Source of the DNA: Styela clava
Taxonomy: Eukaryota
Direction: 5' to 3'
DNA: 64,000 bases
Assembly: GCF_964204865.1 (NCBI RefSeq)
Contig: NC_135262.1
Coordinates: forward strand, 11,346,001 to 11,410,000
Of this stretch, positions 34,828 through 62,401 are shown piece after piece. The position numbers and the translations under genes are program-made. Each line of letters begins with the position of its first letter. The first letter of the stretch is position 1. The notes below the pieces were generated by a model. That model did no database searches. It saw only the letters and a program-made list of their open reading frames with translations, and had not been told where the DNA came from.

Positions 34828-35728
34828 GTTTGATCATCACACGCAAAATAAATCAATGTAATTTTAATATATATATCCGCATACTACTATAAATTATGTG
34901 TCTTATAACAACTGTCAGAGATAAAGCTGACGCAGAGAATATTACCATACTAATTGAAAACAGCCTGAAAGCTGACGTAAAAAAAGGTGAGAGACGTGAG
35001 AGTTAGTTTAAATTCTTTGTTTTACAAAATATCTTTATCATTCTCCAAAATGGCATGGGCTTTGATATAACTCATAATCGTGATCGATCAAAAATAATGA
35101 ATTATCCGAAGTAATTTGAACTTTTTCATCTTACAAAACAAAAACTATAGAATTGCATTTATAATATGTGATGGATAGGCAAACATTAGCGTTATAAGTC
35201 AGTACATTATTGTCTTTCAAATTCTGCCAATGATGCTATATAGCATACCTTTAGCGGTCAAATTGTTTGCTTTGTTAAATTGACTCCATACCGTTACAAA
35301 CAAATATTTGTTCCTATTAGATTACGTAAAGGAATGGGTTAAATGACATATTGACTTATTAGTATAAGATTGACGGAATAAAATCTTAAGGCTCTAAATT
35401 TCTCGATAATTGCTTGTATTGCTTTTATATTTTAGCATAAATTATTGAGAGAGGAAACTAAGCTTCAGTTGTAATGTGCAAAAGATTAATATCGGAATAA
35501 ACATTGTTCAGAAGTTAAGATGTATTCTACTTGAAATAAATGACAGCGGAGGCATTAGGCTTAGCAGCCTAATTATTAAAACAAAAGTTTTTTAAAACAG
35601 AGTTTAGGAATTGAGCAGTAACAAGTTATCTTTCACGTTTATTGATTGAAGTTGAGCAGAAAATACTTCAAATGCAAAACAAATTCAACTCAAAACTGTG
35701 AATCAGTGGCCTGATACTGAAGATTATT

Positions 35729-38700
35729 ATGTCGTCGTATTACATTTATATTTTAATAAACTTGTACGTTTTGTTTCAAACTGGAGTCATGAAGAGAAGT
35801 AAGTGTTATTTAACAAACTCGAAACTACTTATATTTTCTAAAATATAGTAACCTAGATTAGTGTACAGGTATTTAAATTAAAGTCAAAACTGTCAAAAAT
35901 AAAAACTTTTTTGCTGATTGATTCCATAATTGTGTCGGTATACCCACATAAACAAGTATGCATTTAACCGAGAGTATTGATTCTTAACTTTGGCGGGTCT
36001 GCCAAACCACGCTATTGTAAAAGCTTCCTTTGAACCCCATTCAACGGTTGAAATTAGGAGCGCTATTAGAACTTCACAATAGAGAAGATAATTTTATGCA
36101 TGGTTGTAAAAAATGATCATTACATTAGATACCAATATGTAGAGTGGAAATAGTCATTGTCGTATTTCAGTGGTACTGGTAGCAATAATCTTTTATTGTA
36201 TAAAAATTGCTCATTGGAAATCGGGAAGATGATATTATTCCTCGAAAATGTTCGTAGCTCAGTCGTTTCTCAAACTTCAAGCTGCATTCGAATGCGGATT
36301 AAAGCGTTTTTGTGGATTTTTGTCAGATTTGACATAGTCTACTCAATGACTTATTATTATTTAGAGTTTTGTGGTTTTTGCGCATAGAGCGTTATTTTGA
36401 GGCCGTCCAGAACGGATGATAACTTAGAAGAGCTCTAATGAAATATTCGTTGCTACAAATGTATTACTTGGTGAAAGTAAAAACGTCTTGATCCCATATC
36501 AATGTATACACTTCTTTCCTACAATCAACCTGTTCGTAAAACTGAGCTACAATTTATTAGTAAATTAAGAATGAGGTGTTGCGCACGCAATACCTTAAAA
36601 CCCCAAGGTTCGTCATACCAACCTAAGGTATTTCCAACTTATTTTGTATTCGGGGTTTATGGCATATGTGTAGTGATAATTACAAGTTTCTACTTACTTC
36701 AAAATTTTCTTTACCCATCAAAAATGTTGATTATATCATAAAATAATTTTAAGTGTTTAATCCCTTGAAAAAGGAGGACATTTTAACCTTGAAGGGCGTC
36801 CTCGGAGGACATAACATTTTTAACAAAAAAGGAGGACAAATCTTCCAAAAGGAGGTAGTATGGTCACCCCACGATCACACAGCTAATTTTATTTATTGAC
36901 ACATGCAACACCAAAATTCACAATCATTTTTATTCGAGATATGATGAATGCACATGCAAAATTTGGAGCAGATTCGACCTCGTTTTCGTGAGATATCGCG
37001 TGCATCTAACAGACAAACAAACAGAATATGCAAATTTAAATGAGGATGAACATATATATTAAATACAAATTTCGATTATATATCATGGAAATATTTTTAA
37101 CAAATTTTATGTTTAAAAATACCTAAATTATAAATGAGTGTAAAAAACGAAAACCTCCTTTTCCAGGTGAAAATTCTTTCGCGACGCCTGAATGCGGATA
37201 CTACAAACTAGGATGCCCGGTCTCTTATTCCTGTCAAGTTCTTGGCAGACCAGGCGATTACTACTGTTGTAAAACTGGCACTTGTTGTGAATTTTCAGAA
37301 TGTATAAACTCAGGTAACGAATTTTGGGGCATAGACGTGAAAAATACTTACCCAAGGTCATTTTTCCTCTTCTACATGAACAGGCAAGAGAATACAAGTG
37401 AAAATCGGGAGTTATCTAGAAAATTATTTGTTACACTCGTTCAAAATTTGAATTTAACTACGTCCCAATGTAACCTTTTTCGCCGATACCGATATCGTTG
37501 AAAATGTCAAAAGAACGACATGCTGATTTTTTTTGTCGATGGATAAGTAATAATTAACGCAAGTTTAGGCATTGCTAAATCTCTCGATTCTAAACATTTC
37601 GACAAACTATAAGCTAAAAATCAAAAAAATGAGTGATGTTAGAGGTAAAAATGAACCTTAGTGAACCCAGAAAAGATATGCGATTTCAATCGGAGTATAT
37701 AAAGTTTGAGTAACATTTCTATCTTCTAATAAAATCCGAGAACGATTGCTCTAACAGTTGAGGGTAACAGTTTTTGGTCGTCGACAACATGAATACTAAT
37801 TACAGTTTAGCAGGACTTTTTACGAGTCGACTTCGTGTCGAGTCGAACAGTGAAATAATTGTACTTATATTTTTGTTTTCTGTAAAATGAATTTTAAATC
37901 ACGGACGCTGCGATGCGCAAAGCAAACAAGAGAAAGTTTCGGTACTCCCGTAGTGTGTGTACCAGGTTAAGGTTGGGCATTAATTTTATTCCGATTTTTC
38001 CTATTTTATTTCTAATACGAGTTCGGAGACTGTCTGTTTTAGCCAAGTGAATATACCCCCTGCCCATAGGTTTCGGTCCCTTTACACATGTTGATGTAAA
38101 GTAGGCGAACTAAATTAGTTGCCTCCATATTGTCACACACACATTTAGAACGCCAAAGTTTCTTTATTATATGGACAGTAACAGCTAAATAGCCTAATAC
38201 CTTCTGTAATAGCTTATCTCATTACAGACATTAATTGTTATGGAGTGGTTTGTGACGACTACAACACGTGCTGCCGCGATATATCATATGGCAGTTGCTG
38301 TTCGAATCTGGAGGGTCAAGGTATAGAAATCATTTACATGTTTGCATAAATACATACAATTTACTTGTATTTATAAATATACTTTTATTTTATTATTAAC
38401 ATTTGTAACTGATTAAATGTTTACTTTCAATAGAATATAGATTTAATTTTTAAAATCGATTTTCCGTAATATTCAATATATATATAAAACTATTATATAG
38501 TCATAGTTCTGTGTAAGCTACATTTGAATAAAGTTTAGAAATGAAAATTAAATGATTATCATTATATAACATATTAATAAATTAACGTGGATATCACATA
38601 TATATGTATTTATGAGTACTTCATTATAGGAAATTTTATAGTTAAACGATCGATTGACTATTCATATAAAATACAGTATAATTAAACTTGACTATATTAC

Positions 38701-41700
38701 ACAATTGAGCCCGCTCACACTTTCCTTACTTACTCACGCGTTTGAATAAAAACGACATGCAGTTCGACTGTTTGATGGAAGTGTACCTCATGAAGGAAGA
38801 GTAGAAATATATCACTCAGGAACTTGGGGAACAATATGTGATGATGGTTGGGATGAAAACGACGCAGAAGTTGTTTGTCGGATGCTGGAATTTCCTGGAG
38901 TGATATCAGCGCCTTTATATGCTTTTTACGGGGAAGGAACAGGTCCAACATGGCTCAGTGAAGTTGACTGCGCTGGAACTGAAATGTCGTTGTCGGATTG
39001 TACTCATAATTCGTGGGGCGTTCATCACTGTGGACACAACGAAGATGCGTCTGTCAAATGTTTACCTAATGGTATGTTAATGAATATTAAACGTAGAAGT
39101 GTTTGTAATGGAGATTCATATGCCGTTACGTGAAATCGTATCAGATTTTGACTGAGCGAATGTTTGATCACATATACATATCAGACCTTATAGCAACACC
39201 TGGACAAGTCAATGCGATCAGGAAAACATCTCTGTTATTAGTTCCATTCCATAATACAGAAGCTCTAGGAAATTGCCTTTCGAAGATAATTTTCGTTGAC
39301 ATGATTGCAACTTTATGTCTGAATGTTCTGTAAATAATCTGTACAATAAATTAAATGTTTTTACGCTTGTTTAGACGCATGTGAAAATGATGTATAGCGT
39401 CACACCAATGTTAGTTCCTATTTCATTTTCAAGCTAATAATTCAATTTTTATTTATAGTTCGTTTAGCTGACGGTCAACTCAACAAAGGGCGCGTGGAAA
39501 TATTTCACGCGGGTGTATGGGGAACAATATGTGATTTCGGTTGGGATATAGAAGATGCAAAAGTTGTATGTAGGGCGCTTGAGTTTCCAGGAGTTATATC
39601 TGCACTAAAATACGCGTATTATGGAGAGGGTACGGGTCAAATTTGGTTAAACAACGTCAACTGTGATGGGAATGAAGTGTCATTAGACCAATGTGCACAT
39701 AATGGTTGGGGATCACATTTTTGTTCACATGACGATGACGCGGCTGTAGAGTGTCTATCAACAGGTTTGCTGATTACTGATATTTACAAATTGTGATCGT
39801 AGTTATATATTAGATCGTAGTGTATATTATTTCAGTTATTATTTTTAGTTCAACGTCTATCTATATAATGCTTAAAATATACTATGATTTACTTTCAAAT
39901 ATCGATGATACCATGTTGTATGACGTGTAACTTTGGACTTTATCTGAAATCTGCCTTTATCGCCCATACCCCCTCTATATCATTCTAGTGGTATTTATAC
40001 TGTTATTATGATTGGTAGACTCTAAATCCTATTATGTTTGCCCAATTCAAGATCAATAAAGTGAAAACACTGTGAAATATCTTTCCCAGCAATGAACCAC
40101 GAAGAGGGACACAGAGTGGTTTGAGGGGAGCCACAATGCTAGGCGCACAACTGATTTTACTTATTCTTTGACAATAAACTCCCAGTTCTTCCTAACTTCA
40201 TTATGAAGCGCCTAGCATTGTGGCTCCCCTCAAACAATTCTGTGGCCCGTTTCGTAGGCCATAGGCTCAAGGCTGAGAACCGCTGAATAAAAGCCCGGAA
40301 CGGGCAGAATGATCGTGGGGTTCACTTGAGTCTATACCTTACAATAGCTTTGTCAAAATTGTTCTGGCCAACATGTGTCTCCACTATGGATGTAGCCTAT
40401 GTCCATCATTCAACATTGTTTACCACGATAGTGTGAATAGTTACACGTTTCACCTCTTTTATAGTTCGTATAGTAGGTGGAAATGAGATAAATGAAGGAA
40501 GGGTGGAAATATATCACGAAGGAATATGGGGGACAATATGCGATGATTCCTGGGATATTAACGATGCGGAAGTTGTGTGTAGAATGCTAGGATTTCCTGG
40601 TGCAACGTCTGCCCCTGTTGAAGCTTACCACGGGGAAGGTGGTGGTCAAATATGGCTGAGTAGCGTCTCGTGCTCAGGAAATGAACAAAGATTGGAAAAT
40701 TGTAATCACGGTTCTTGGGGGTCACATCATTGCACCCATGCTGAAGACGCGTCCGTACATTGTCTTCCTACAGGTCAGTAGACTGCTCATGTGGATAGAT
40801 TATACGATATTTCACGTCCTATTTGTATAGGAGAAACACACTATTGTTGTCTAATGTCCTGATGAGAAGGTGAACTATTACTAAATTCAAAAAGTATTGA
40901 TCGTGAATGATCTGACCAATAATTCGAAATATTTTATTATTAACTCGTACTTATTACAATGAAGATAGTTTACCGGGCGTCTATTATCTTACCAAATAAA
41001 TTCAAATCAAAATTTTTATCACTACGTATAGAAATGAGGTAAAATGTAAGCACACTAAAATTTCTAAATGTATAATAAACTAATTTCCAACTTTTTCTAT
41101 CATTGTCAAGATATATGTATTTACCAAATATATTCTCATTTTCTGTTAGCTCGACTTATTCTCGATGGAGACGAGATCAACGTCGGGAGAGTTGAGATAT
41201 ATCACGCTGAGGAATGGGGAACAATCTGCAGCAATTCATGGGGTATAAATGACGCAGAAGTTGTGTGCAGAATGATAGGCTTTGTCGGAGTAACATCTGC
41301 ACCAACATTTGCTTTCTATGGTCCTGGAACTGATCAAATATGGTTAAATAACGTTGATTGCATCGGCAATGAAAAAAGAATCGAAGACTGTCCACATAGT
41401 GGATGGAGTTTAAATAGCTGTTCCCACACATGGGACGCGTCTGCGGCCTGCTTTTCTACCGGTAAGTCTCCAGTGATCTAATCAAAAACCTTTCTAGTAA
41501 TTTATGCGAGCCCACGTAACTTTATTGATGAAACATCAAAGAATATATGGTTACCTATTGCACTCTCAAATTTCACACACATCTGAACCAGTGGTGGGAT
41601 TCAGCCGGTTCGCACCGGTTCTATAGAACCGTCGCACGGAATTTTATGAGATCAGCGAACCGGTTAGCATTAATGGTTACTGCTAATGACTTTTTGTAAC

Positions 41701-44700
41701 ACAACCGGCTGAAATATATGATTTTTGTGATGTAACCGGTTGACAAAAAATTTGAATCCCACCACTGATCTAAACTTCCTGTCCTGCTACGCTGACTTTG
41801 TAACACAATGTAACTTCGTAAACACAAATTTATAAGGCAAAAGTCGACGACCAGTCTACATCAACCCCAGCATTCATTTATAGTTAACATTTCCCTTACA
41901 TCTTGTTGGAAGCGAAACAGGTTCAACCTCCCCTGGATGTCATTCGCAATATTGTTGTCATATTTCCTTTCCTGCTTTGTTTTTTTCGTGATTGTTCGTG
42001 GTGGTCGATATGTATTGAATTGTAAGGAGATAGGGCTGGAATAAATTGGGTAGGACTTAAAAATATTTCCGGTAACATGCTGTTCTGTGTTAGGGTAGAT
42101 ATATATATATTGTTCAAAGATATTGGTTGAAGTGAGCAATATGAAGGGAGATTCATTCTATGTTCTCGGTTAGAATAAATATAATTCTCTGGCAGAATAG
42201 ATTATTTGTATAAATCGATTTTGTTATAACAGGAATGAGCACGTGGCACAACATATTCGAGATACAAATTTTATACATTATTTTTACGAGTGTATTTTGA
42301 TATTAAATGTAAAAACATGTTGAAATGATTTCATTCAAATCTAAAGCCTTCTGAAGATTAACTAGTTTTGTACCAAACTAAAGTTCACGCGAAAATATTT
42401 GATTGGGATACCGTTTTGGACTCATTGAACTCTACATAGTAGATACAACATAATCATGTCTCAAATTCTTTAAATTTGGATATTTTGTCATAAACTATTA
42501 CTGAAACGTTGCAAAAAAAGTTATGCAAAAACATGGCCAATCGTTTTTTAATCCGTACTGTGTGTTTTTAATCCGTACTGTGTGTATGTTTATGGAATTA
42601 ATTTCTCATCACAGTCCGGCTAGTCGATAGTGGCGTAGCTCACAAAGGAAGAGTTGAAATATTTCATGACGGTTTATGGGGAACAATATGCGATAGGTAC
42701 TATTGGGACATAAATGATGCAAAGGTTGTCTGTAAAATGCTGGGCTTCCATGGTGACAGTTTCACACCCGGGCCATCGTATTACGGACCAGGTACTGGTA
42801 AAATTTGGCTTTCTGATGTGCAATGCGCTGGGAATGAAGCTACTTTGGAAGACTGCGATCACGATAGTTGGGGAAACGTGGGAAGTTGCATCCATGTAGA
42901 AGATGCTTCCGTTGAATGCATTTCTAATGGTAAGATAAATATTGATTCATTATTATTATCTTCAAATTCTCTAAACGAATGTCAAATAATATGTACTGTA
43001 TATTGGTGTGTTTAAGTTCCTGTTTGTCGGCAAACGGTAAATAATTTCAAAGGTTTTACCTAGATCTGAAAACGATAATTTAATGGGTCGCAGAATTGAA
43101 GAGTATAAACCTCCAAGTAATATTCAGAACCTGCCTGATCATACATAACCTCTACAAAATAACTAGTTTGCTAACATTCGTCATCGATAACAGTGCGATT
43201 GAATAATGGAAATAATATTAACGACGGAATAGTAGAAATTTACCACGATGATGAGTGGGGAACAATATGTGATGATGAATGGGATATAAATGAGGCGAAA
43301 GTTGTTTGTAGAATGCTTGGATTTCCTGGAGCAATATCAGCACACACTGATGCAGACTTTGAAGGAGCAGCAAGCAAAATATCGCTCAGTAATGTCGAGT
43401 GTACAGGAACTGAATCGACTTTGTATGATTGCACTTACAGCGCGTCCAATTATTGTGATCGCAGCAAAGTTGCGTCCGTTGAGTGTATTCCCACGGGTGA
43501 GTTTTATTTACCAGAAAAGAAGAGGTTGACCTTCTGAATACTCACGAAGATGTTATTTTTATTGAATACATCATATGTTGTTTTTAGTGAGACTGATTGA
43601 TGGTAGTACCTCTCAAGAAGGGCGGGTTGAGATATATCATGATAATGTTTGGGGAACAATATGTACTGGTTATCGATCTTGGGACTCTGATAATGCCAAC
43701 GTCATTTGTAGAATGCTCGGGATGTCCAATGGAAAATCGTTGGAAAACGCATATTTTGGAGAAGGTTCGGGAAAAATATGGCTTTCGTATAGAATTTATT
43801 GTACCGGATTTGAAGAAACGTTGGAAGATTGTGACCATGCATCTTGGGGAGATGTCGACTGTGAACACTATACAGATATCTCCGTCCAATGTTCGATATC
43901 AATAGAAGGTATACATTTTATTACTTAGGCCTACGTACCATAGAATTACCTAAGTACCATCATAGTAGCGCTATTTCTATAAATATCCAAGTACATTGTT
44001 TTACATTTATATGAATTACAAATATATCGGTATACAGAATAAAACAAATAGATATCGGCATAATCAGCTACATAAACTTGCTCGTGTTTGAAAAGTTGGG
44101 CAAGCGCAAGACATTATCAACGACAACATACGCAGAAACGGTGCGGGGTTGTTTCGGTAAATAATGTTTTCGCTTGTCTGTTGTCGAAGCAACTGCTTGA
44201 TTTACGATTTATTCAACAGACTAACGTTAAGGTATACTTATAAATGTTTGTTCTAAGCAAATTCACAGTAAGGGGGACACAAACGGTGTGTTTTCCCCAG
44301 CTCTGAATGTCCGCAGTCTGCACAAACGCATCAAATCTGGAAAATGAATATAATAAAAAGGTAACACACAGTTGGCCAAAAAGTATTCGTATTATAAAAT
44401 TGCTCATACGAATGGCGACACACCGGCATATGCAATGATTTCTAATGACATATTCTCTCAGGCACGCACGCTACCGGCATACTAGAATAATTATCTTAAT
44501 CTGCATAGTGCCTACATCTACAGCCTACTGATGAGTTAGTTATCCGTGCTCATTTTGCTCTAGGAATGAACGAATTGAAATTCGCCAACTCCAAAATTCT
44601 AATACGCTGTGTTTTTTTTGTTTATTTGCAATTCAACACAACAATATTACGCTAATGCTCCTCACCGCAACACCTCACGACTTCCTTGCTCTTATTTTCG

Positions 44701-47700
44701 TAACCATGACAATCAGCAAAATGTCGACGGTGACGTAATAATTGAAATTTACTCAAGCATATCAGACACTTCTAATTGATTCGTTTTTGTAAGTTTGGTT
44801 CATTATTGGGATTAAAAAATCAAATACAGAAGCACATAATATTTCTAAATAACAATGACGATTCAAACTATTTTCAGTTTTATGTTAATTCGACTCTTTA
44901 GGATAGTATATAATCATTATAATATCTTTTTCTTGATAGAGTATGTTCGGAAAGTTTCGACTTTCATTCTATGCTTATCACAATTCTTTTGCAACGTAGA
45001 ACTCAATCATTTTATTTAAATCACAGATACAGAATCCGGGAACTTTTGGATTCTCGGAGTTATGTGGGGAATTATTCTAATCCTGTTGTTAATTCCCGTG
45101 TACATGTTTAGAGATTCATTACGTGAGTAATCATTATAAATACCAGCCTAATATAAATGTGTTTGCTGTCATTGTAAACACAATTATCTATACAAAAGGT
45201 ACTAAAAACATTAATGGCTAGTGCCATTTGCGCAGTTTGGACGGGACGCTTGAAGGTTAAAAAATCTCAATCGTAAAATGTTTGAATAAAAGAATTACCA
45301 ATAAGGAACGAAACCTGTTTTTTACTTTAATAACGTTCAAGTATCTAATTTCAACAGAAATCGTTACAAATTGTTAGTCAACGGCCAAGGGGCGCATTTT
45401 TAAACTTAGCCACGGGCGCAATTATACGTAGATTTACGCCACTGGTTAGAATTGAATTCTCATGATATGTATTTCAAATGAGTATAAAATTTACCCACTA
45501 CGTCAGCTCCATGAATTTCATTTGCTCAAGTTGTGTCGTTTTTGATATTTTCATTGCTTATGTTGCTGTTACTGCAATAGTATAGCCCAAGGGTCGGCAA
45601 CCCACGGCCCGCGGAGTATAATAATCCGGCCCGCGACGCTTCACTGAACTATAGCGACAAAACGGCGGTTTTGACGATGAATTAATTTTATAATCCACGC
45701 TCGAGGAGTTGATTCTATTTTTTACGTAACATAATTTATTGTGAGACACGTGTAGATTTTATTATAACCTAACTATTTAGTGAACAGCTAGCTACTCGTT
45801 TAACGAGGCTACAACTTAACTATAATTAGACAAATTTTTTTCCAAAATGAACATTACAATGAACAATTTAAGAACTCGGATTAGTGGTACCCATTTAGAA
45901 AATGTTCTAATCTTGGCTTCATCCAGTGTACCACGTGATGTCAAAAAGCTATCAACCGTGATACAATAACAAGTGTCTCATTAATTGTCATTTGTAAATT
46001 ATTTTCTTTTTATTAGGACGACTGAGTTGAGACCTTGAGTTGACGCAGTTTTCGCGAGCGACAAAAGGTTGCCGACCCCTGGTCATAGGCTATGACTATG
46101 AATAGTCAATAATATTCGATTGAATATTGTGCAATGTCAAATACTTTACCAATCATATTTTTCAGGAGAATTGCTTGAGGATATTTTTGAAATTACTTAT
46201 GATGGTACGAAAGATTTTCTTTTGTTTTAGTATGCAAATTTAGCACAAAAACCGACTAATGTGGGTGTCAAAATGAGCGTTCTGCGTTATTGAATATCAT
46301 TTAACATTTATATGTGGTACAATATCTTCTTTTGCTGCATTGCGAGTGGAATTATGAAATTTTCTTCCAAAACTGTACTCAAGCTTACACGACTTATACT
46401 TGTTTTATACTTCCAGGTTTGATATTTTTGCCTATGCTACCATACAGAACTTATAAAGCTTGCTGTAAAGGTGAGTTTTATTTGATTTTTGGTATTTTAT
46501 TACCTAGTCAATGCTAAAATTTGACTTTTATTTTTATCATCCTCAATACAGCCTACTTTACCTTTATTAATTCACTACCAACAATGTCAAGGTATCTATG
46601 TTCATAATTTCCAATATCAAAAAGCCTGAATTGGACAGTGGGAGTTCCCGCGGCAGATTCACAGTGTCGTCTTCAGTAATAAACAATGTGTTGTGAAGTT
46701 TCCTTTTATAACTAAGGTGCTTCACAGATTCTATAGTTACATTATACGATTTAACAGAAGACGATTATCCAGTCAATATGACTCCGCGGCAACCGCAAAC
46801 TCCATCCACGGCATCAGAAATAAACAGTGCCCATGTATATTGTGAGTATAATGTTACAAATGACCTTCAATAAAATATTGAGTACTGATACAAGGAGCAT
46901 AGCCAGGAATATTTAAATGGGTGTTCTGAAACATCTAATTGCCAAGTTGGACCGTAACAGCTAACGGGTCCGACCTCGGTCGGAAAACGTGGAGTCATTA
47001 GTGTCTAGACGCGTTTCAAGTTTTGAAAAATTGCTATATGTGTTAAGGGAAAATGTTTTTTTTTTCATATCAAATTGGGGGGTCAACTCGTCAAATTTAT
47101 CCTGTTGCCCTTTCTGCCGTGCGACAACAAAGTTGAATGTTGAAAATACGATAAGTTGGTTTTCCTTTATAATTAAATTTTAAAAAAATTGAATAGAATC
47201 GAGACGTATTTCCTGAAAATTCTGAAACCTAAACAAATCCTATTGTGTAATTTGTGGCTTCGGTAAGCGGATTCATATATATATATTCACAAATTTAATA
47301 TATTTTGCCGTACTTCGATATATAAAGAAATCATGAAATGTATTATTATTTTTTTTTTATTTGGAATATTAGACTTGATCTTTAATATTTTTTGGTAATT
47401 CAGATATCCAACCAAGTCCAGAATCGGTAATACGCTCAGCTCCACCTATGTCACGCAGTGAACCGTCATCTCCATCGGCGCCCAGCATTGAACATGAACC
47501 GGTAACGAACAATCCTGAAGGTATGGAATAATAAAGATTGCAGTTGAAGTATTTTCTTTTCTACATGCATTCTGTAATATTTGTAGCAATCTTACTTTGC
47601 AGGAATTTCAGAAGACAGACTTTGTGTTATCTGTCTATCAGAAGAAAAGAATGTTTTCTTTGGGCCTTGTGGTCACGTGTGTTGTTGTAATGGCTGCGGA

Positions 47701-47772
47701 ATGAGGAGTGATGTAACAGATTGTCCGATTTGCAGGAACAGAATTGAGCAAAGAAAAAGAATTTTTTTATGA
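35729..47772 (+). CDS. Type I membrane protein: signal peptide, Cys-rich region, 7 SRCR domains, TM, PSAP-containing tail, C3HC4 RING (scavenger receptor-E3 ligase), ~1014 aa
   Basis: 16 exons: 35729-35798 (signal), 37167-37313 and 38228-38320 (Cys-rich), SRCR1-7 at 38763-39071, 39459-39764, 40465-40773, 41150-41461, 42615-42929, 43194-43496, 43588-43908, TM 45027-45122, 46166-46204, 46417-46470, 46758-46841, 47404-47520, RING 47603-47772. All introns are GT-AG and phase 1; 3045 nt with no internal stop; AATAAA at 47925. Confidence 0.85.
38763..43908 (+). CDS. Array of seven SRCR-domain exons (6-Cys type, one domain per exon)
   Basis: Each exon reads approximately VRL..G...EGRVEIYH.G.WGTICD..W...DA.VVCRMLGF......YG.G.G.IWL..V.C.G.E..L..C.H..WG...C.H..DA.V.C; lengths 303-321 nt, phase 1-1. 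Confidence 0.95.
41589..41767. mobile_element. hAT-type MITE in the SRCR4-SRCR5 intron
   Basis: TIR CAGTGGTGGGATTCA / TGAATCCCACCACTG; TSD atctgaac/atctaaac (one mismatch). Confidence 0.8.
45027..45122 (+). CDS. Transmembrane-helix exon of the SRCR-RING gene
   Basis: tcacag|...|gtgagt; translates DTESGNFWILGVMWGIILILLLIPVYMFRDSL, a 22-residue hydrophobic run followed by Arg. Confidence 0.85.
45588..46081 (+). mobile_element. Charlie-like hAT deletion derivative in the intron after the TM exon
   Basis: TIR caagggtcggcaacc / ggttgccgacccctg; transposase C-terminal remnant FSKMNITMNNLRTRISGTHLENVLILASS at ~45838-45925. Confidence 0.8.
47603..47772 (+). CDS. Terminal RING-finger exon (C3HC4, LRSAM1/IAP-like)
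   Basis: ctttgcag| translates GISEDRLCVICLSEEKNVFFGPCGHVCCCNGCGMRSDVTDCPICRNRIEQRKRIFL*. Confidence 0.93.
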
Positions 47773-55705: not shown

Positions 55706-58700
55706 ATGTCGTCGTATTACGTTTATATTTTATTATATTTATTCATGTTTTTTCAAAGTGGAGTCATGAATCTAAGTAAGTTATTACTTACATTTTCCAA
55801 AAGATAGTAACCTCATAATTTGATGTATTTAAAGTAAAGTCGAGATTGTCAAAAAATAAAACTGTTTGTTTTGCCATCGAAGAAGTTGTTGAATGATTCC
55901 ACAATTGTATTGGTATACCCATACTGATATTAGACATTTCTCAACCTTCTTGTCCTGTTGTGCCAATGAACGCCACACAATTTGGAGTGTTCAATTCCAC
56001 GTTTCCATTGGTAACAAGACTATATGATATATTTTATCAAAGCGAACATTATGAACCCTAGGCTGTGACCCAGTATAAGTAAACAGATTCAGTCAAATTT
56101 TGTTCTTATTTACTTCAATGACCACAAAACTACAACGTTCCTGAACACTTTACATTGAACGTGAAAAATTGATCATTTCAATGAATTAAAATTTGGAGTT
56201 TAACAATAATCTTATCGGTTCTTTTAATTGTTCGACGATTGTTTTATTATAGTGCAATTGTGTCTTGTCAGATGAATACAAAAATGTGCGAATTTAAATG
56301 TGTCAACCTTTATACGAATAGAATTTCGATTTCATACCATGGAATTATATATATGAAATTTAATGCTTTAAACATATGAAATACCTAAATTATAAATGGG
56401 AGTGAAAAACGATAACCTTGGTTTCCAGGTGAAAATTCTTTCCTGGCTGAATGCGTATACTACAAACTCGGATGCCCGGTCTCTGTTTCTTGTCAAGTTC
56501 TTGCCAGACCAGGCGATTACTACTGTTGTAAAACTGGCACTTGTTGTGGATTTTCAGAATGTAGAAACACAGGTAATAAATTTTGTGTAAGTTCTTTATG
56601 GAAAATTAACTGTGTCACCTTTTCTTATGGTAAAATTAGAGATGTACCGATATCACTTCCCTCGCCGATACCGATACTGTCAAAAATGGCGAAAGAACGA
56701 CATGCTAATTTTAGTTAATAGATAAGTAATGATTTACCCAAGTTTAAGCATTCCAAATCTCTGATTCTAAAAATCTGTAAGGTAAAAATTTTACTCAGGC
56801 AAAAAAGTAAAATTAGAGGTAGAAATGACCCCGAGTGTGGATAAAGAAGATATGCAATTACAATAGGAGTACATAAAAGTTGAGTAGCATTTCTATCTTC
56901 TAATAAAAGCTGAGAATTATTTTTGAAATTGAAGGTAACATATTTTGGTCACCAAATCTATTCATGAATCTATTTCGTGTTTTAAAAAGAAAAATAACTG
57001 CACTCATATTTTTGTTTCCTGTCGAATGGTTTTTAAATCACTGACGCCACAATGCGCAAAGCAAACTTTTTTTTCATCATATGGACATTAACAGCTAAAT
57101 AGTCTAACACTTTCTATAATAGCTTATCTCATTACAGATATTAACTGTAACGGAGTGGTTTGTGACGACTACAACACTTGCTGTCGCGATATATCATACG
57201 GCGGTTGCTGCGCAAATCTGGAGGGTCAAGGTATATTAATTATTTACATGTTTGCTCAATAATACATTTCACCTACATGTATTTATAAACATACCTGTAT
57301 TTTTATTAACATTTGTAACAGATTTTAGAATAGAATCGCATATTTTTTCCTAATCGCATCTCAAATATTTGGAAGATATTCAAATGCATGTAACTTTTTT
57401 TTATTGTCATTACGTTTTTCACTTGGGTCATCCAATCACAGAAATTAGTCAAAACGTAGAATCAATCACTCAGACAGTTTCGAAATTTCCAGCCCTATGT
57501 ATGAGTACTTCATTAGGGAATTTCATAGTTTAACTATTGGTTGTCTAGACATATAAAAATATAATCAAACTCAGCAAGATTACGCAATCCATCCCACTCA
57601 CACTTTCCTTTCTTACTGATACCTATGAATGGAAACGACGTGCAGTTAGACTGTCTGATGGAAGAGTACCTCAAGAAGTAGAAATATATCACTCAGGAAT
57701 CTGGGGAACAATATGTGATGATGGCTGGGATGAAAACGACGCAGAAGTTGTTTGCCGGATGTTGGAGTTTCCTGGAGTAATATCAGCGCCTTTATATGCC
57801 TTATATGGGAAGGGAACTGGTCCAACATGGCTCAGTGAAGTTGACTGCTCTGGAGCTGAAAATGGATTGTCGGGTTGTCCTCATAATGCATGGGGCGTTC
57901 ATCATTGTGGACACAACGAAGATGCGTCTGTCAAATGTTTACCTAATGGTATGTTCATGAACATTAAAACGTAGAAGTGTTTATAATGGCGAAGTAAGGT
58001 CACAGAATTCACACTAATATAAAAGATTCTTATGAAGGCGCTACGAAAAATCAGTATCAGGTATTTGTCAGGGCCTCTTTTTAATCACCTTTGCATACCA
58101 TATCTTAGCCACACTTAGACAAGTTAATGCGACCAAGAAAACATCTCAATTAATTTAAATTTACAGTACAGAAGCTCTTGGAACTTTATTCCACTATATG
58201 TCTGAATGATTTTCACAAGAAATAAAATTAATGTGTTTAAGCTTATTTGGACGCTTGTGCCAATTATGTACAACCTCACACCCATGTTAGTTTCTATTTC
58301 TTTTTTTGCAGTTCTATTTATTCGATTTATATTTATAGTTCGCTTAGCTGACGGTCAACTCAACAAAGGCCGCGTGGAAATATTTCACGCGGGTGCATGG
58401 GGAACAATATGGGATTTCAGTTGGGATCTAGAAGATGCAAGAGTTGTTTGTAGGACGCTTGAGTTTCCAGGAGTTATATCTGCACTAAAAAACGCGTATT
58501 ATGGAGAGGGCACGGGTCAAATTTGGTTAAACAACGTCAACTGTGATGGGAATGAAGATTCATTAGACCAATGTCCCCATAATAGTTGGGGATCAAATTC
58601 TTGTTCACATGGTGATGACGCGGCTGTAGAGTGTCTATCAACAGGTTTGTTGAATAAAGTTATTTTGCAAATTTCAAGTGATCGTATTATGAATACTACT

Positions 58701-61700
58701 TTAGTTTAAACAGTCATGTACTGAAATGTACTATAGATTTATTTTTAAACATCGATGATACCATGTTGTAAGATGTGTCCGTATAGACTTCTTCTGAGAT
58801 CTTTGAAATCAAACATATTGAAAGCAGTGGTTCCCAACCTTTTATTGCCCGCGGCCCCATTCCAGAAGTGTCCACCATCTATGGCTCGCCTGTTCACCAT
58901 TCCAGTGGTATTTAGAGTGCTATTCTGATTGATAGATTATGAATCCCATTATGTTAGCACAATTCAAGTTCAAGTGAAAACATCCTGTGGAATATATTTC
59001 TCAGGCAATGAAACTAGGAAGAAATATCTTGTGGCTCCTCTCCAACACTGTGTTGACCCTTGATGAGCCACAGGGCCCCCGAAAACGCTGATCAAAAGCA
59101 TAACATACAGGCCTTCGCCAGGATGAATTGTCAAAACCCAGAATCATAATTGTTCTGACCAACATGTGTTTCTGGATGTATTTCCGCCCCTCAACATTGT
59201 TTACCACCAGATTTTAAATAAATACACGTTTCACCTTTTTTATAGTTCGTATAGTAGACGGAAATGATATAAATGGGGTGAACAAAGATTGGAAGATTGT
59301 AATCACGGTTCCTGGGGGTCACATCATTGCACCCATGCTGAAGATGCCTCGGCACATTGTCTTCCTACAGGTCAGTAGGCGCACGTGAATAGATTATGCG
59401 ATATTTCACGTTCAGTTTTTGTAAGCGAGTAACACACCATTGTTGTCTAATGTCCCGATGACAGGGTGAACAATTTATTGATCGTGAAAGATCCAACGAT
59501 TTTCTGATCAATATTTTATCATTAACTCATACTTATTACAATGAAGATAATTTGCCAGACATATGTTCACAAGTTTGTCCTCCATCGGCACATTCAGCTA
59601 ATAGCTTTTCTATGGGATTCTTGTGGGAAACGTCCCACGGGATAGCACCATGTGTATTCCCCATGAGACATGTGAACAAGTAGCCTTGTATATAACTGGG
59701 ACAATTTTATTTAAGATTACGTTTTGTACGTCAACAAAAATGACATTATGTCCTTGTCGGCGCGGTTTTAAAAAAGCCGTTTATGTAACGTATTAACCCA
59801 TACCAATTTGCGATCGGGTCAGGAAAAGATTTTTGTGGCTACGCCATTCACGGTTTTCAGAAAAAGCACTGTACGGACGAATTTCCGACGACCAGTCTAC
59901 ATCAACCCCTTAATCAGCATCCATTTATAGTTGACATTTCTTTTACATCTTGTTGGAAGCGTCACAGGTTTGACCTTCCCTGGATGTCATTCGCAGTATT
60001 GATGTCGTAATTCTTTTCATGTTTTGTTTTTTCTGTGATTGTTCGTAGTAGTCGATATTCGATATTTATTGAATTGCAATGAGATGGGACTGCAATAAAT
60101 TGAGTGGGACTCCAAACTATTTACATAAAAAGCATGCTTAACGTGCTGTTCTGAGTTAGGGTAGATATATACTTCGAAGATATTGGTTGAAGTAAGCATA
60201 TGAAGTGAGATTCATTCTATGTTCTCGGTCAGAACAAATATAATTCTCTAGCAAAATAGATCATTTGTATAAAGTGATTTTGAAAAATCGGAACAAGTGC
60301 GGGGCACAACATATTCGAGATACAAATTTTATACACTACTTTTTTTAGTCATTGTTACGAGAGTATTTTGATATTGAATGTAAAAAAATTGATATAATTT
60401 CATTCAAATCTGAAGCCGTTCGAAGATCAACTAATTTTGTACCAAACTAAAGCCCACGCAAAAATAGGTAATTCGAACATATTTTGGACTCATTAGAGGA
60501 AACCTCCATGGATACAACATATTCATGCGGCAAATTCTTCAAATTTGAATATTTTGTCAACAAACCACTACTGAAACGTTGCAAATGAAAATATGCAAAA
60601 ACATACATTTGTGTATTGAGGGCCAATCGAAGTCCTTTAAATCCATATTGTGTGTATGTTTATTGAATTGATTTTTCTTATCACAGTTCGGCTAGTCAAC
60701 AGTGGCGTAGCTCACAAAGGAAGAGTCGAGATATTTCATGATGGTTTATGGGGAACTATATGTGGTTATTACTATTGGGACATAAATAATGCAAAGGTTT
60801 TTTGTAAAATGCTTGGCTTTCCTGACGTTATATCAGCACCCACGTCATCATTTTACGGACCAGGTACTGGCAAGATTTGGCTTTATGCTGTCCAGTGCAC
60901 TGGATATGAAGCCACTTTAGAAGACTGCTACAACAATGGTTGGGGAGACGTTAGTTCATGCAATCATGGATATGATGCCTCCGTTGAACGTATTTCAACT
61001 GGTAAGATGAATATTAAATCATATTTTATATGTAATTAATTTTTTTTCAAGTGATGTGAAATAGTCTGAAGATTGAGTTCACATTTCATCGGTTATACAC
61101 ATAATATTACCAATACGATTTTCGACGATGTCGAGTGGCAAGGATATGTAGTGGCAGGTAGGACATAACCGAGGTTAAGAATTATTTTACAAATTCTTGG
61201 TGCGATATCAACAGATGCAGACTATACAACAGACGGGGATGGATCGACGACGCATAGTTTGTAACTGTGTATAAATGCTTTTAGGACTATAGTCCAATTA
61301 TTGCTATCACAGCAAAGTTGCGTCCGTTCATTCTAAAATTCATCTGCGATCAGAATGAATATTCATACATCAACGCCATTACGATTGCTTCACTGTGATC
61401 GGCTCGGAGATGACGATGATCGGCATTTCGCTATCAGTGTACGTTGATATATATATATATATATACCTACACTGTCGAGTGTGGAACCACAGAGAAACAT
61501 GGAAGGTGATTGAGCATTGTCAAAGTTCTGCTGACTGTCGAGCTCACGAGCACGGTCGGTATATGACGTGATGAAGCTGATTTACTTAGCGTTTATCGTT
61601 GATTTTCTGTCATTTCCCAAACTACCTGAACAGTGCCCGAATTCATTTTGCTTCAAGTTTGTTGATTACCAATCTTGCAGCAGCTTTTATCGCTCTATCC

Positions 61701-62401
61701 GGTCACACCGAGAAACTCTTCAATGTGAGGTTAATATGGCGAGCATCGATTAACATGTTCCTAGCAGTGGAAATGTTTGTAATAGCCATTCAGGAAAGGT
61801 AGTACAATAAATTTTATAACAACGGAAATAGATAAACGGCCTTCGTGTGAAATGAACAAGATGACCGCAAAAAATATCCATGCGGTATACTTATCAGCAG
61901 CAGCTACCTTACAATGATTATTTTCATAGAGCAACAAATTACGAGAACAACGTGCTATCAAACTGGCGATATGCGGAAATTTGCGCATGCTGCAACATAT
62001 GTACTAATACTGTCCCCGTCTGAAATCAGTAAATTCCTCTGAATATTATTTTATCGATGTTATTATTTGACACAAGTTTTGTTCTTTTATAGTTCGTATA
62101 GTAAGCGGCAATGGAATAAATGAAGGAAGAGTAGAAATATACCACGGAGAAATATGGGGAACAATATGCGATGATGGTTGGGATATTAAAGATGCGGAAG
62201 TTGTGTGTAGAATGATGGGATTTCCCGAAGCAAAGTCTGCTCCTGTTCGAGCTTATTATGGGAAAGGGGTTGGTCAAATATGGCTGAGTAGCGTCTCTTG
62301 CTCAGGGGATGAACAAAGGTTGGAAAATTGCAATCACGGTTCTTGGGGATCACATCATTGCAGCCATGATGAAGATGCTTCCGTGCATTGTCTTCCTACA
62401 G
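55706..62401 (+). pseudogene. Tandem paralog of the SRCR-RING gene, 5' part only; partly decayed (pseudogene, or functional through exon skipping)
   Basis: Exons 55706-55775 (signal), 56429-56572 and 57138-57230 (Cys-rich, intact), SRCR1' 57646-57948 (GR deleted), SRCR2' 58339-58644 (first Cys to Trp), SRCR3' 59246-59370 (125 nt, frameshifting deletion), SRCR5' 60687-61001 (last Cys to Arg), degraded SRCR6 relic ~61100-61330, and an intact extra SRCR3-like exon 62093-62401. Introns are also homologous to copy 1. Confidence 0.75.

What the first reader, a model, noticed from the sequence alone, without database searches (positions are those of the whole stretch)
35729..47772. Scavenger receptor fused to a RING E3 ligase (SP-Cys-rich-7xSRCR-TM-PSAP-RING)
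Seen in sequence: 16 phase-1 GT-AG exons join into one open ~1014-aa frame with a signal peptide, seven SRCR domains, one TM helix, a ~155-aa cytoplasmic tail and a terminal C3HC4 RING (CVICLSEEKNVFFGPCGHVCCCNGCGMRSDVTDCPICRNRIEQRKRIFL). The TM and RING exons are short and missing from the ORF track, so an automated reading would call this 'DMBT1-like'. Established: SRCR arrays (DMBT1, CD163, MARCO, sea-urchin SRCRs) bind microbes or ligands and normally have no catalytic tail; the familiar single-pass RING ligases (RNF43/ZNRF3, RNF128/GRAIL family) use PA ectodomains. I know of no characterised SRCR-TM-RING protein. Inference: a pattern-recognition receptor that couples extracellular or phagosomal ligand binding directly to ubiquitination, either of itself, of bound membrane partners, or as a signalling output.
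Basis: partly seen in the sequence, partly recalled or inferred. Interest (0 to 1): 0.92.

Follow-up and report, generated by a model that had tools for sequence, protein, structure and literature searches.

The report
Scavenger-receptor array with RING ligase tail
A sea squirt (Styela clava) gene really does join seven microbe-binding-type SRCR domains, a membrane anchor and a C-terminal RING ubiquitin-ligase domain; this undescribed receptor design was seen only in this species, and its function is untested.

Summary
Sixteen GT-AG, phase-1 exons at window 35729-47772 give an open 1014-codon frame. It has seven SRCR domains (Pfam E 1e-25 to 1e-34), one transmembrane helix, a Pro/Ser-rich tail with PSAP, and a terminal zf-C3HC4_3 RING (E 7.5e-15).

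The genome is Styela clava. NCBI RefSeq already models this exact join (XP_077975564.1, XP_039256740.1) under "DMBT1-like"/"SRCR superfamily" names. The gene model is therefore not new, but the fused architecture is unremarked, and five paper searches found no description.

A tandem paralogue 20 kb downstream has the same layout. No other SRCR exon in the genome lies within 200 kb of such a RING exon. In the public protein searches, only S. clava proteins combined SRCR with this RING.

The RING is closest to the IDOL/MYLIP and IAP RINGs and keeps all eight zinc ligands.

Cautions:
- The tail evolves almost neutrally between the paralogues (dN/dS 0.81, against 0.31 for the ectodomain).
- The paralogue's RING has lost a canonical zinc ligand.
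- One RefSeq isoform skips the membrane exon.
- No read-level RNA evidence could be obtained.

Verdict: a real, lineage-restricted, exon-shuffled receptor-type RING ligase candidate. It is a new variant of a known kind, of moderate interest.

The parts
34896..34991 (+). Alternative first coding exon used by the current RefSeq model XP_077975564.1. It encodes 32 residues with no signal-peptide-like hydrophobic core.
   Evidence: Exact mapping of P0152 residues 1-32. Maximum 10-residue hydropathy is 0.97.
35729..35798 (+).
   Evidence: The homologous exon starts RefSeq models P0153 and P0002, with 10-residue hydropathy of 2.4-2.5. It is 67% conserved in the paralogue at 55706.
37167..37313 (+). 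Cys-rich exon 2 (10 Cys). It gives a weak, sub-threshold Lustrin_cystein match.
   Evidence: Pfam PF14625, E 0.0012, 19.5 bits, below the cut-off of 27. Splice sites.
38228..38320 (+). Cys-rich exon 3 (6 Cys). No family match.
   Evidence: It is 90% identical in the paralogue, with dN/dS 0.08.
38763..39071 (+). SRCR domain 1 (single exon, phase 1-1, six Cys).
   Evidence: PF00530, E 3.6e-34.
39459..39764 (+). SRCR domain 2.
   Evidence: PF00530, E 9.4e-32.
40465..40773 (+). SRCR domain 3.
   Evidence: PF00530, E 1.1e-34.
41150..41461 (+). SRCR domain 4.
   Evidence: PF00530, E 1.4e-28.
42615..42929 (+). SRCR domain 5.
   Evidence: PF00530, E 1.6e-28.
43194..43496 (+). SRCR domain 6, the most divergent: the usual G-x-G-x-IWL stretch reads AASKISL.
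   Evidence: PF00530, E 1.8e-27. Sequence read directly.
43588..43908 (+). SRCR domain 7.
   Evidence: PF00530, E 2e-25.
45027..45122 (+). Transmembrane exon. An acidic stub comes first, then a 22-residue hydrophobic helix, then RDSLR. Reading on into the intron gives a stop two codons after the donor. This exon is skipped in RefSeq isoform X2 (P0154).
   Evidence: The only other copy in the genome is in the paralogue.
46166..46204 (+). 39-nt cytoplasmic micro-exon. With the next exon it forms YDGL, a Yxx-hydrophobic motif.
   Evidence: Needed to reproduce P0152 exactly. Motif.
46417..46470 (+). 54-nt cytoplasmic micro-exon (hydrophobic, ends CCK). It is absent from paralogue model P0002 and present in P0151.
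46758..46841 (+). Cytoplasmic tail exon, Pro/Thr/Ser-rich. No family match.
   Evidence: dN/dS against the paralogue is 1.41 on 26 codons.
47404..47520 (+). Cytoplasmic tail exon, Pro/Ser-rich, with PSAP (SSPSAPS) about 20 residues before the RING.
   Evidence: No other copy was found in the genome at E<=1. tblastn finds only the first 16 residues in the paralogue, whose exon is shortened and lacks PSAP.
47603..47772 (+). Terminal RING exon: zf-C3HC4_3 with eight zinc ligands, CPICR with Arg after the last Cys, and a C-terminal ...RIFL before the stop.
   Evidence: PF13920, E 7.5e-15. Nearest solved RINGs are MYLIP/IDOL (3e-10), cIAP2 (1.3e-9), cIAP1, XIAP, BIRC7 and MUL1, with the two printed alignments (MYLIP/IDOL, cIAP2) running to the last residue.
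55706..62400 (+). In-window part of the tandem paralogue (RefSeq XP_077975565.1, 700 aa): SP exon, two Cys-rich exons, four SRCR exons and one SRCR fragment. Its TM exon, tail exons and RING lie past the window end, at continued window numbering 66015-69252 (G000:C17:11412015-11415252).

Best explanation
SHOWN: Window 35729-47772 is one protein-coding gene of the tunicate Styela clava. It encodes a type I membrane protein with these parts in order: a signal-peptide-like N-terminus, a short Cys-rich region, seven six-Cys SRCR domains, one transmembrane helix, a cytoplasmic tail of about 100 residues with no family match (Pro/Ser-rich), and a C-terminal RING of the zf-C3HC4_3 (IAP/IDOL) subtype.

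SHOWN: Every exon is phase 1-1. The closest RING exons elsewhere in the genome are also terminal exons with a phase-1 acceptor a few codons before the first Cys.

INFERRED: The gene arose by exon shuffling of a movable RING exon, plus TM and linker exons, onto an SRCR array. A tandem duplication followed. As far as the searches reach, the design is restricted to this lineage.

INFERRED MECHANISM: The SRCR array binds a polyvalent extracellular ligand, either microbial or self-derived polyanionic surfaces, as in DMBT1-type SRCRs. Clustering brings the C-terminal RINGs together; IDOL and IAP RINGs work as tail-mediated dimers. The RING recruits an E2~ubiquitin and ubiquitinates the receptor's own tail or neighbouring membrane proteins. 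This drives endocytosis and ESCRT sorting of receptor plus cargo, with PSAP as a possible TSG101 handle, or seeds a ubiquitin-dependent signal.
For: Domains are confirmed exon by exon. The 16 GT-AG phase-1 exons give an open 1014-codon frame that is identical over 989 residues to RefSeq XP_077975564.1. Two RefSeq releases, built on different assemblies, both join SRCR to TM, tail and RING, and both include 39- and 54-nt micro-exons that have no homology support. The tandem paralogue keeps the same order of parts. The TM and tail exons occur nowhere else in the genome. The nearest other pairing of an SRCR exon and a RING exon is 201 kb apart. The RING aligns to its last residue with the IDOL and cIAP2 RINGs and keeps all eight ligands, the Arg after the last Cys and the C-terminal aromatic residue. 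The SRCR ectodomain is under purifying selection, dN/dS 0.31. P[ST]AP arises in only 1.9% of shuffled tails and is present once or twice in both known alleles of this gene. Five related RING exons have the same phase-1 acceptor.
Against: dN/dS for the tail is 0.81 and for the RING 0.74 (12 changes), neither distinguishable from neutrality. The paralogue's RING reads CGHVSCYNDC in this assembly, so the canonical fifth ligand is Tyr. PSAP and YDGL are absent from the paralogue. RefSeq isoform X2 skips the TM exon in frame, which would put the RING in the secretory lumen. The current RefSeq model lacks a signal peptide. An in-frame stop lies two codons into the intron after the TM exon, and an AATAAA lies about 160 nt downstream, so a short-tailed isoform without the RING is possible. 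No orthologue was found outside S. clava.
Confidence: 0.55

Rival explanations
1. A young chimeric gene whose RING tail is an evolutionary accident. Exon shuffling put TM, linker and RING exons behind an SRCR array. The product is made, but the tail is under little or no selection and does nothing specific. The working part is the SRCR ectodomain, membrane-bound or shed.
For: dN/dS between the paralogues is 0.81 for the tail and 0.74 for the RING, against 0.31 for the ectodomain. The paralogue's RING has Tyr at the canonical fifth zinc-ligand position. Tail motifs are not shared between the paralogues. An in-frame isoform lacks the TM exon. The design is confined to one species in the searches.
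Against: In this gene all eight ligands, the Arg after the last Cys and the C-terminal aromatic residue are intact in both known alleles. The older model of the paralogue (P0151) also keeps CGHVCCC. The frame is open through four short tail exons in both genes. The RING comparison rests on only 12 substitutions.
Confidence: 0.25
2. An annotation artefact. The locus holds two transcription units: an SRCR-TM receptor that ends at the stop just after the TM exon, and separate or unexpressed downstream RING exons that gene predictors join only because all phases match.
For: All exons are phase 1-1, so any join stays in frame. A stop codon lies two codons into the intron after 45122, with an AATAAA at 45285. 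RefSeq XP models are predictions. No reads could be examined.
Against: No start-codon exon for an independent RING gene was seen between 45122 and 47603. The micro-exons of 39 and 54 nt are unlikely to be placed without spliced-read support. Two annotation releases, and the paralogue, give the same join. The TM and tail exons exist only next to these two SRCR arrays.
Confidence: 0.1
3. A real receptor ligase whose ligand is self rather than microbial, for example in cell-cell or allorecognition, gamete recognition or clearance of own debris. The RING tunes surface levels of a polymorphic recognition molecule.
For: The SRCR content of this locus differs strongly between the two assemblies. P0153 carries paralogue-like SRCR5 and SRCR6 and is only 87% identical overall to P0152, and P0151 has a different SRCR count from P0002. 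Such structural polymorphism is typical of recognition loci.
Against: The differences may be assembly collapse or gene conversion between tandem copies. No expression or genetic data are available. This is speculation.
Confidence: 0.1

Closest known systems
PA-TM-RING receptor ligases (RNF43/ZNRF3, GRAIL/RNF128, Goliath family)
   Same: Type I single-pass membrane proteins with a ligand-binding ectodomain and a cytoplasmic RING. They ubiquitinate neighbouring receptors and drive their endocytosis. This is the nearest functional analogue (from established knowledge).
   Different: Their ectodomain is a protease-associated domain and their RING is a RING-H2 placed well before the C-terminus. Here the ectodomain is a 7x SRCR array and the RING is a C-terminal zf-C3HC4_3. 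No homology was detected outside the generic RING fold.
IDOL/MYLIP and IAP RINGs (cIAP1/2, XIAP, BIRC7), MUL1
   Same: They are the best sequence matches to the RING (E 3e-10 to 4e-7). The printed alignments (MYLIP/IDOL, cIAP2) run to the C-terminal ...[FY]L, and the CPxCR motif is shared. IDOL also acts on a membrane receptor tail (LDLR).
   Different: Those proteins are soluble, or mitochondrial-membrane in the case of MUL1, and find substrates through FERM, BIR or GIDE domains. None has an extracellular domain. A RING homodimer prediction here gave no verdict.
DMBT1 / sea-urchin and mollusc SRCR arrays, CD163, WC1
   Same: Tandem SRCR domains, one exon each, in phase 1. These are the best full-length relatives of the ectodomain, at 40-50% identity. 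CD163 and WC1 are also type I membrane proteins.
   Different: None of the 117 non-Styela proteins among the 120 listed hits carries PF13920. The SRCRs here have six Cys, not the eight of group B.
LRSAM1 / Tal
   Same: P[ST]AP motif(s) directly upstream of a C-terminal zf-C3HC4_3 RING. One allele here (P0153) has two PSAPs 13 residues apart. SAM-plus-RING proteins are among the nearest RING relatives.
   Different: No LRR or SAM domain, and the protein is membrane-anchored. The motif is absent from the paralogue, so the resemblance may be convergent or chance.

Membership tests
SRCR superfamily (PF00530) | Domain of about 100 residues matching the SRCR profile above the curated cut-off | tested here: met
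   Seven exons score 89-119 bits against a cut-off of 26.1.
SRCR superfamily (PF00530) | Group B pattern of eight cysteines per domain (implied by the RefSeq name of the paralogue) | tested here: not met
   Each domain has six Cys by direct reading. The domains are single-exon like group B but have the six-Cys count of group A.
RING E3 ligases, zf-C3HC4_3 subtype (PF13920) | C3HC4 zinc-ligand pattern matching the profile above the cut-off | tested here: met
   54.9 bits against a cut-off of 27. All eight ligands align with the IDOL and cIAP2 RINGs.
RING E3 ligases, zf-C3HC4_3 subtype (PF13920) | E2-dependent ubiquitin transfer | not testable with these tools
   Needs an in vitro auto-ubiquitination assay.
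RING E3 ligases, zf-C3HC4_3 subtype (PF13920) | Tail-mediated RING dimer, as in IDOL, cIAP and BIRC7 | tested here: inconclusive
   The homodimer prediction scored 0.18, below the mark of 0.32, and the tool gave no verdict. The C-terminal ...RIFL resembles ...RTFL(S) and ...HVYL.
PA-TM-RING family (RNF43/ZNRF3/GRAIL) | Protease-associated ectodomain and RING-H2 | tested here: not met
   No exon matched a PA domain. The best RING match is PF13920, and zf-RING_2 scores 23.6 bits, below its cut-off.
Single-pass type I membrane receptor | Cleavable signal peptide plus one TM helix, with the tail in the cytosol | tested here: inconclusive
   The TM helix is clear, with hydropathy 2.03 and basic residues after it. 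The signal-peptide exon is hydrophobic but lacks a basic n-region. It is used in models P0153 and P0002 but not in P0152. No signal-peptide predictor was available.
One transcription unit (SRCR to RING) | Spliced RNA molecules that link SRCR7, the TM exon, the tail exons and the RING exon | not testable with these tools
Support comes only from RefSeq models.
LRSAM1/Tal | LRR and SAM domains upstream of P[ST]AP and the RING | tested here: not met
   The tail exons match no Pfam family, and the upstream part of the protein is SRCR and TM.

The most novel reading that the evidence does not exclude
Styela clava has independently invented receptor-type ubiquitin ligases by moving one phase-1 terminal RING exon behind different extracellular arrays. 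One case is SRCR (this tandem pair) and another may be fibronectin-III repeats (C10:10.83 Mb). The SRCR version would be a pattern-recognition receptor whose ligand-induced clustering directly switches on its own E3 activity. That would be a one-protein route from microbe binding to ubiquitin signalling or ESCRT sorting, a route not known in any animal.
Probability: 0.25. Interest if true: 0.75.

Novelty: new variant of a known kind. Interest (0 to 1): 0.5.

Why it matters
Known scavenger and SRCR receptors rely on adaptor proteins for signalling and turnover. Known transmembrane RING ligases use other ectodomains. A natural SRCR-TM-RING protein would show that binding by a pattern-recognition domain can be wired directly to ubiquitination. 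It would also give a compact system for testing how clustering activates a dimeric RING. The locus is a clean worked example of exon shuffling as well: every exon is phase 1-1, and the movable terminal RING exon is seen in several contexts. The value is limited by restriction to one tunicate species, near-neutral evolution of the tail between the paralogues, and the lack of any expression or activity data.

Tried and rejected

2. Transcript-derived fragments: a search with the SRCR7 exon for proteins of 58-185 aa found nothing above 51% identity, so no S. clava fragment spans SRCR7 to the TM exon.

3. ESM Atlas look-alikes for residues 740-1021 of P0152 gave no usable hit.

4. RING homodimer prediction: score 0.18, below the mark of 0.32, no verdict. 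This counts neither for nor against dimerisation.

5. Exon versus intron conservation between the tandem copies is uninformative. Introns are 82-86% identical, the same as the exons.

6. Own-genome searches with the TM exon and the PSAP exon found no donor gene for the tail.

7. Five paper searches for SRCR together with RING, and for Styela clava SRCR, found nothing relevant. The one zf-C3HC4 hit concerned THAP proteins.

8. Earlier-findings searches by words returned nothing relevant.

9. Rejected idea: that the RING exon belongs to the LRSAM1 family proper. There is no LRR or SAM domain, and the SAM-RING relatives P0047 and P0114 lack P[ST]AP.

10. No search was run with a hand-joined spliced model. 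Exons were searched one by one by reference, and whole-protein searches used the database's own models by id. The joined frame was checked only locally, for openness and for identity to P0152, and was neither printed nor sent anywhere.
Full report
**What is there**

The + strand of window 35.7-47.8 kb carries a series of short open frames in an AT-rich (about 35% GC), intron-rich animal genome. Each candidate exon was translated by reference and scanned against Pfam.
- Seven exons are full-length SRCR domains: PF00530, 89-119 bits, E 2e-25 to 1e-34.
- The last exon is a zf-C3HC4_3 RING: PF13920, 54.9 bits, E 7.5e-15.
- Two upstream exons are Cys-rich with no significant family match. One gives a sub-threshold Lustrin_cystein hit.
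- The exon at 45027-45122 encodes a 22-residue hydrophobic helix followed by RDSLR.
- The two longer cytoplasmic tail exons scanned (ending 46841 and at 47404-47520) match no Pfam family; the 39- and 54-nt micro-exons were not scanned.

**Gene model**

All boundaries are AG|...|GT and all introns are phase 1. With two micro-exons (46166-46204 and 46417-46470), the 16 exons sum to 3045 nt. That is 1014 codons plus a stop, with no internal stop, and the product is identical over 989 residues to a RefSeq protein.

No search was made with a hand-joined model. Exons were searched singly by reference, and whole-protein searches used database models by id. The join was checked only locally.

**Whose genome, and what is already annotated**

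A HMMER search of 1.84 billion representative proteins with the RING exon gave one close hit, P0002 (84% identity, 700 aa, RING at the C-terminus). P0002 is XP_077975565.1 of Styela clava, encoded on a 20,344,166-bp contig. That is the length of the window's own contig, C17.

Searching with the tail of P0002 found only three proteins, all from S. clava and all carrying both PF00530 and PF13920.
- P0152 (XP_077975564.1, 1021 aa, "SRCR superfamily protein-like") is this gene.
- Its cluster also holds XP_039256740.1 (1028 aa) and XP_039256741.1 (996 aa), "DMBT1-like isoforms X1/X2" from an earlier annotation.

So NCBI's pipeline has twice joined SRCR to TM, tail and RING, but under names that hide the RING. 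The models differ at two points:
- The current one starts at an upstream exon (34896-34991) without a signal peptide, whereas the older one and the paralogue use the signal-peptide-like exon (35729 here).
- Isoform X2 skips the TM exon in frame.

**Tandem paralogue**

A second RING exon, 84% identical, lies 21.5 kb downstream, just past the window end. After fetching that DNA, exon-by-exon tblastn showed a full second gene. It starts at window 55706 and has the SP exon, two Cys-rich exons, four SRCR exons plus a fragment, and the TM, tail and RING exons. It corresponds to P0002.

Introns are as similar as exons between the two copies (82-86%). The duplication is therefore recent, and conservation alone does not mark the exons.

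**How unusual is the combination?**

- Within the genome, 78 SRCR exon matches and 72 PF13920 exon matches were mapped. Apart from these two genes, the closest SRCR-RING pair is 201 kb apart. These counts are lower bounds.
- The TM exon occurs only in these two genes. The PSAP exon was recovered only in this gene by the own-genome search; tblastn detects just the start of its shortened paralogue counterpart.
- In public proteins, among the 120 best matches to the SRCR7-to-RING region only the three S. clava entries carry PF13920. Echinoderm, mollusc, amphioxus, cnidarian and vertebrate SRCR arrays do not.
- Among the 148 next-best relatives of the RING, the partner domains are ankyrin (Mib-like), BIR, SAM, TPR and GIDE. 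SRCR is not among the 25 most frequent families.
- Paper searches returned no description of an SRCR-RING protein.
- These searches do not prove absence elsewhere. 5,325 RING matches exist, and only the top 150 were inspected.

**Origin**

The five most similar RING exons elsewhere in the genome are also terminal exons with a phase-1 acceptor 6-10 codons before the first Cys, as here. All SRCR, TM and tail exons are phase 1-1. This is the classic set-up for exon shuffling, and that origin is an inference.

One of those RING exons (C10:10.83 Mb) sits just downstream of fibronectin-III exons and a TM-like open frame. The same RING exon may therefore have been attached to another ectodomain. This was not shown to be one gene.

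**The RING**

Its best solved relatives are:
- MYLIP/IDOL (E 3e-10)
- cIAP2 (1.3e-9)
- cIAP1, XIAP and BIRC7
- MUL1

In the alignments printed for the top matches (MYLIP/IDOL and cIAP2), the alignment runs to the final residue. All eight zinc ligands, the CPxC-Arg and the C-terminal ...RIFL are present; compare ...RTFL(S) in cIAP2 and ...HVYL in IDOL. From established structural work on BIRC7, cIAP2 and IDOL, these features serve E2~ubiquitin activation by a tail-mediated RING dimer. A homodimer prediction here gave no verdict.

**Signs of weak constraint**

Nei-Gojobori estimates between the two paralogues:
- Ectodomain: dN/dS 0.31.
- TM, tail and RING exons together: dN/dS 0.81.
- RING alone: dN/dS 0.74, on only 12 changes.

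In this assembly the paralogue's RING reads CGHVSCYNDC. The Cys that aligns with the fifth ligand of IDOL and cIAP2 is therefore Tyr, although a neighbouring Cys remains. The older model P0151 keeps CGHVCCC.

PSAP arises in 1.9% of shuffled tails. It is present once in this assembly's allele and twice in the older allele, and it is deleted in the paralogue. The same holds for a YDGL motif.

Reading through the donor of the TM exon hits a stop after two codons, and an AATAAA lies about 160 nt on. A RING-less short-tail isoform is therefore conceivable.

**Interpretation**

The architecture is real with high probability, about 0.85-0.9.
- Best reading: a lineage-restricted receptor-type RING ligase made by exon shuffling, working by ligand-induced clustering, RING-dependent ubiquitination in cis or on neighbours, and endocytic or ESCRT sorting.
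- Rival 1: the tail is a nearly neutral passenger.
- Rival 2: the join is an annotation artefact.
- Rival 3: the ligand is self rather than microbial. The SRCR content of the locus differs markedly between the two assemblies.

Functionally it resembles the PA-TM-RING ligases (RNF43/ZNRF3/GRAIL), but it fails their membership tests. By sequence, its RING belongs with IDOL and the IAPs and its ectodomain with DMBT1-like arrays.

**Limits**

No eukaryotic genome other than this one could be searched at the DNA level.

Noticed in passing
G000:C10:10831707-10836531 (L004, L016), minus strand: Six open frames in series look like fibronectin-III exons; five were scanned and four pass Pfam (PF00041, E 2e-9 to 5e-6). 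They are followed by a TM-like open frame (C10:10832818-10832738) and a terminal phase-1 RING exon that is 45% identical to this gene's RING. This may be a second ectodomain-TM-RING receptor. It was not shown to be one gene.
   Followed up: partly
L003, L004, L006, L007, L010 (own-genome RING exons on C4 and C10): The RING exons closest to this gene's RING are all terminal exons with a phase-1 acceptor 6-10 codons before the first Cys. This looks like a movable exon family. PDZ exons lie upstream of L007. PH+GLTP and Nup98-GLEBS frames lie upstream of L010 and L006 and are probably neighbouring genes.
   Followed up: partly
window 42615-43496, compared with proteins P0153 and P0151: The older RefSeq allele of this gene carries paralogue-like SRCR5 and SRCR6 and is only 87% identical overall. 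The older paralogue model has a different number and order of SRCRs. This points to structural polymorphism, gene conversion or assembly collapse in the SRCR array.
   Followed up: no
continued window numbering 69088-69252 (G000:C17:11415088-11415252): In this assembly the paralogue's RING has Ser and Tyr in place of two of the three consecutive Cys (CGHVSCYNDC). The canonical fifth zinc ligand is therefore lost, unless the adjacent Cys substitutes for it.
   Followed up: partly
window 45123-45290: An in-frame stop lies two codons into the intron after the TM exon, and an AATAAA lies at 45285-45290. A short-tailed, RING-less receptor isoform made by intronic polyadenylation is possible.
   Followed up: no
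window 34896-34991: This upstream exon is used as the first coding exon by the current RefSeq model. It gives a product without a signal peptide, which does not fit a disulphide-rich SRCR ectodomain. It is probably a 5'UTR exon or a non-productive start.
   Followed up: partly
window about 26279-26960 and upstream: According to another first-reader note, the neighbouring upstream gene is ESRP (epithelial splicing regulatory protein). This was not examined here.
   Followed up: no
L015 (G000:C4:24901079-24911078), minus strand: Long open frames of 169 and 250 aa upstream of RING exon L003 look like a hAT/ZBED-type transposase by eye. They were not scanned.
   Followed up: no
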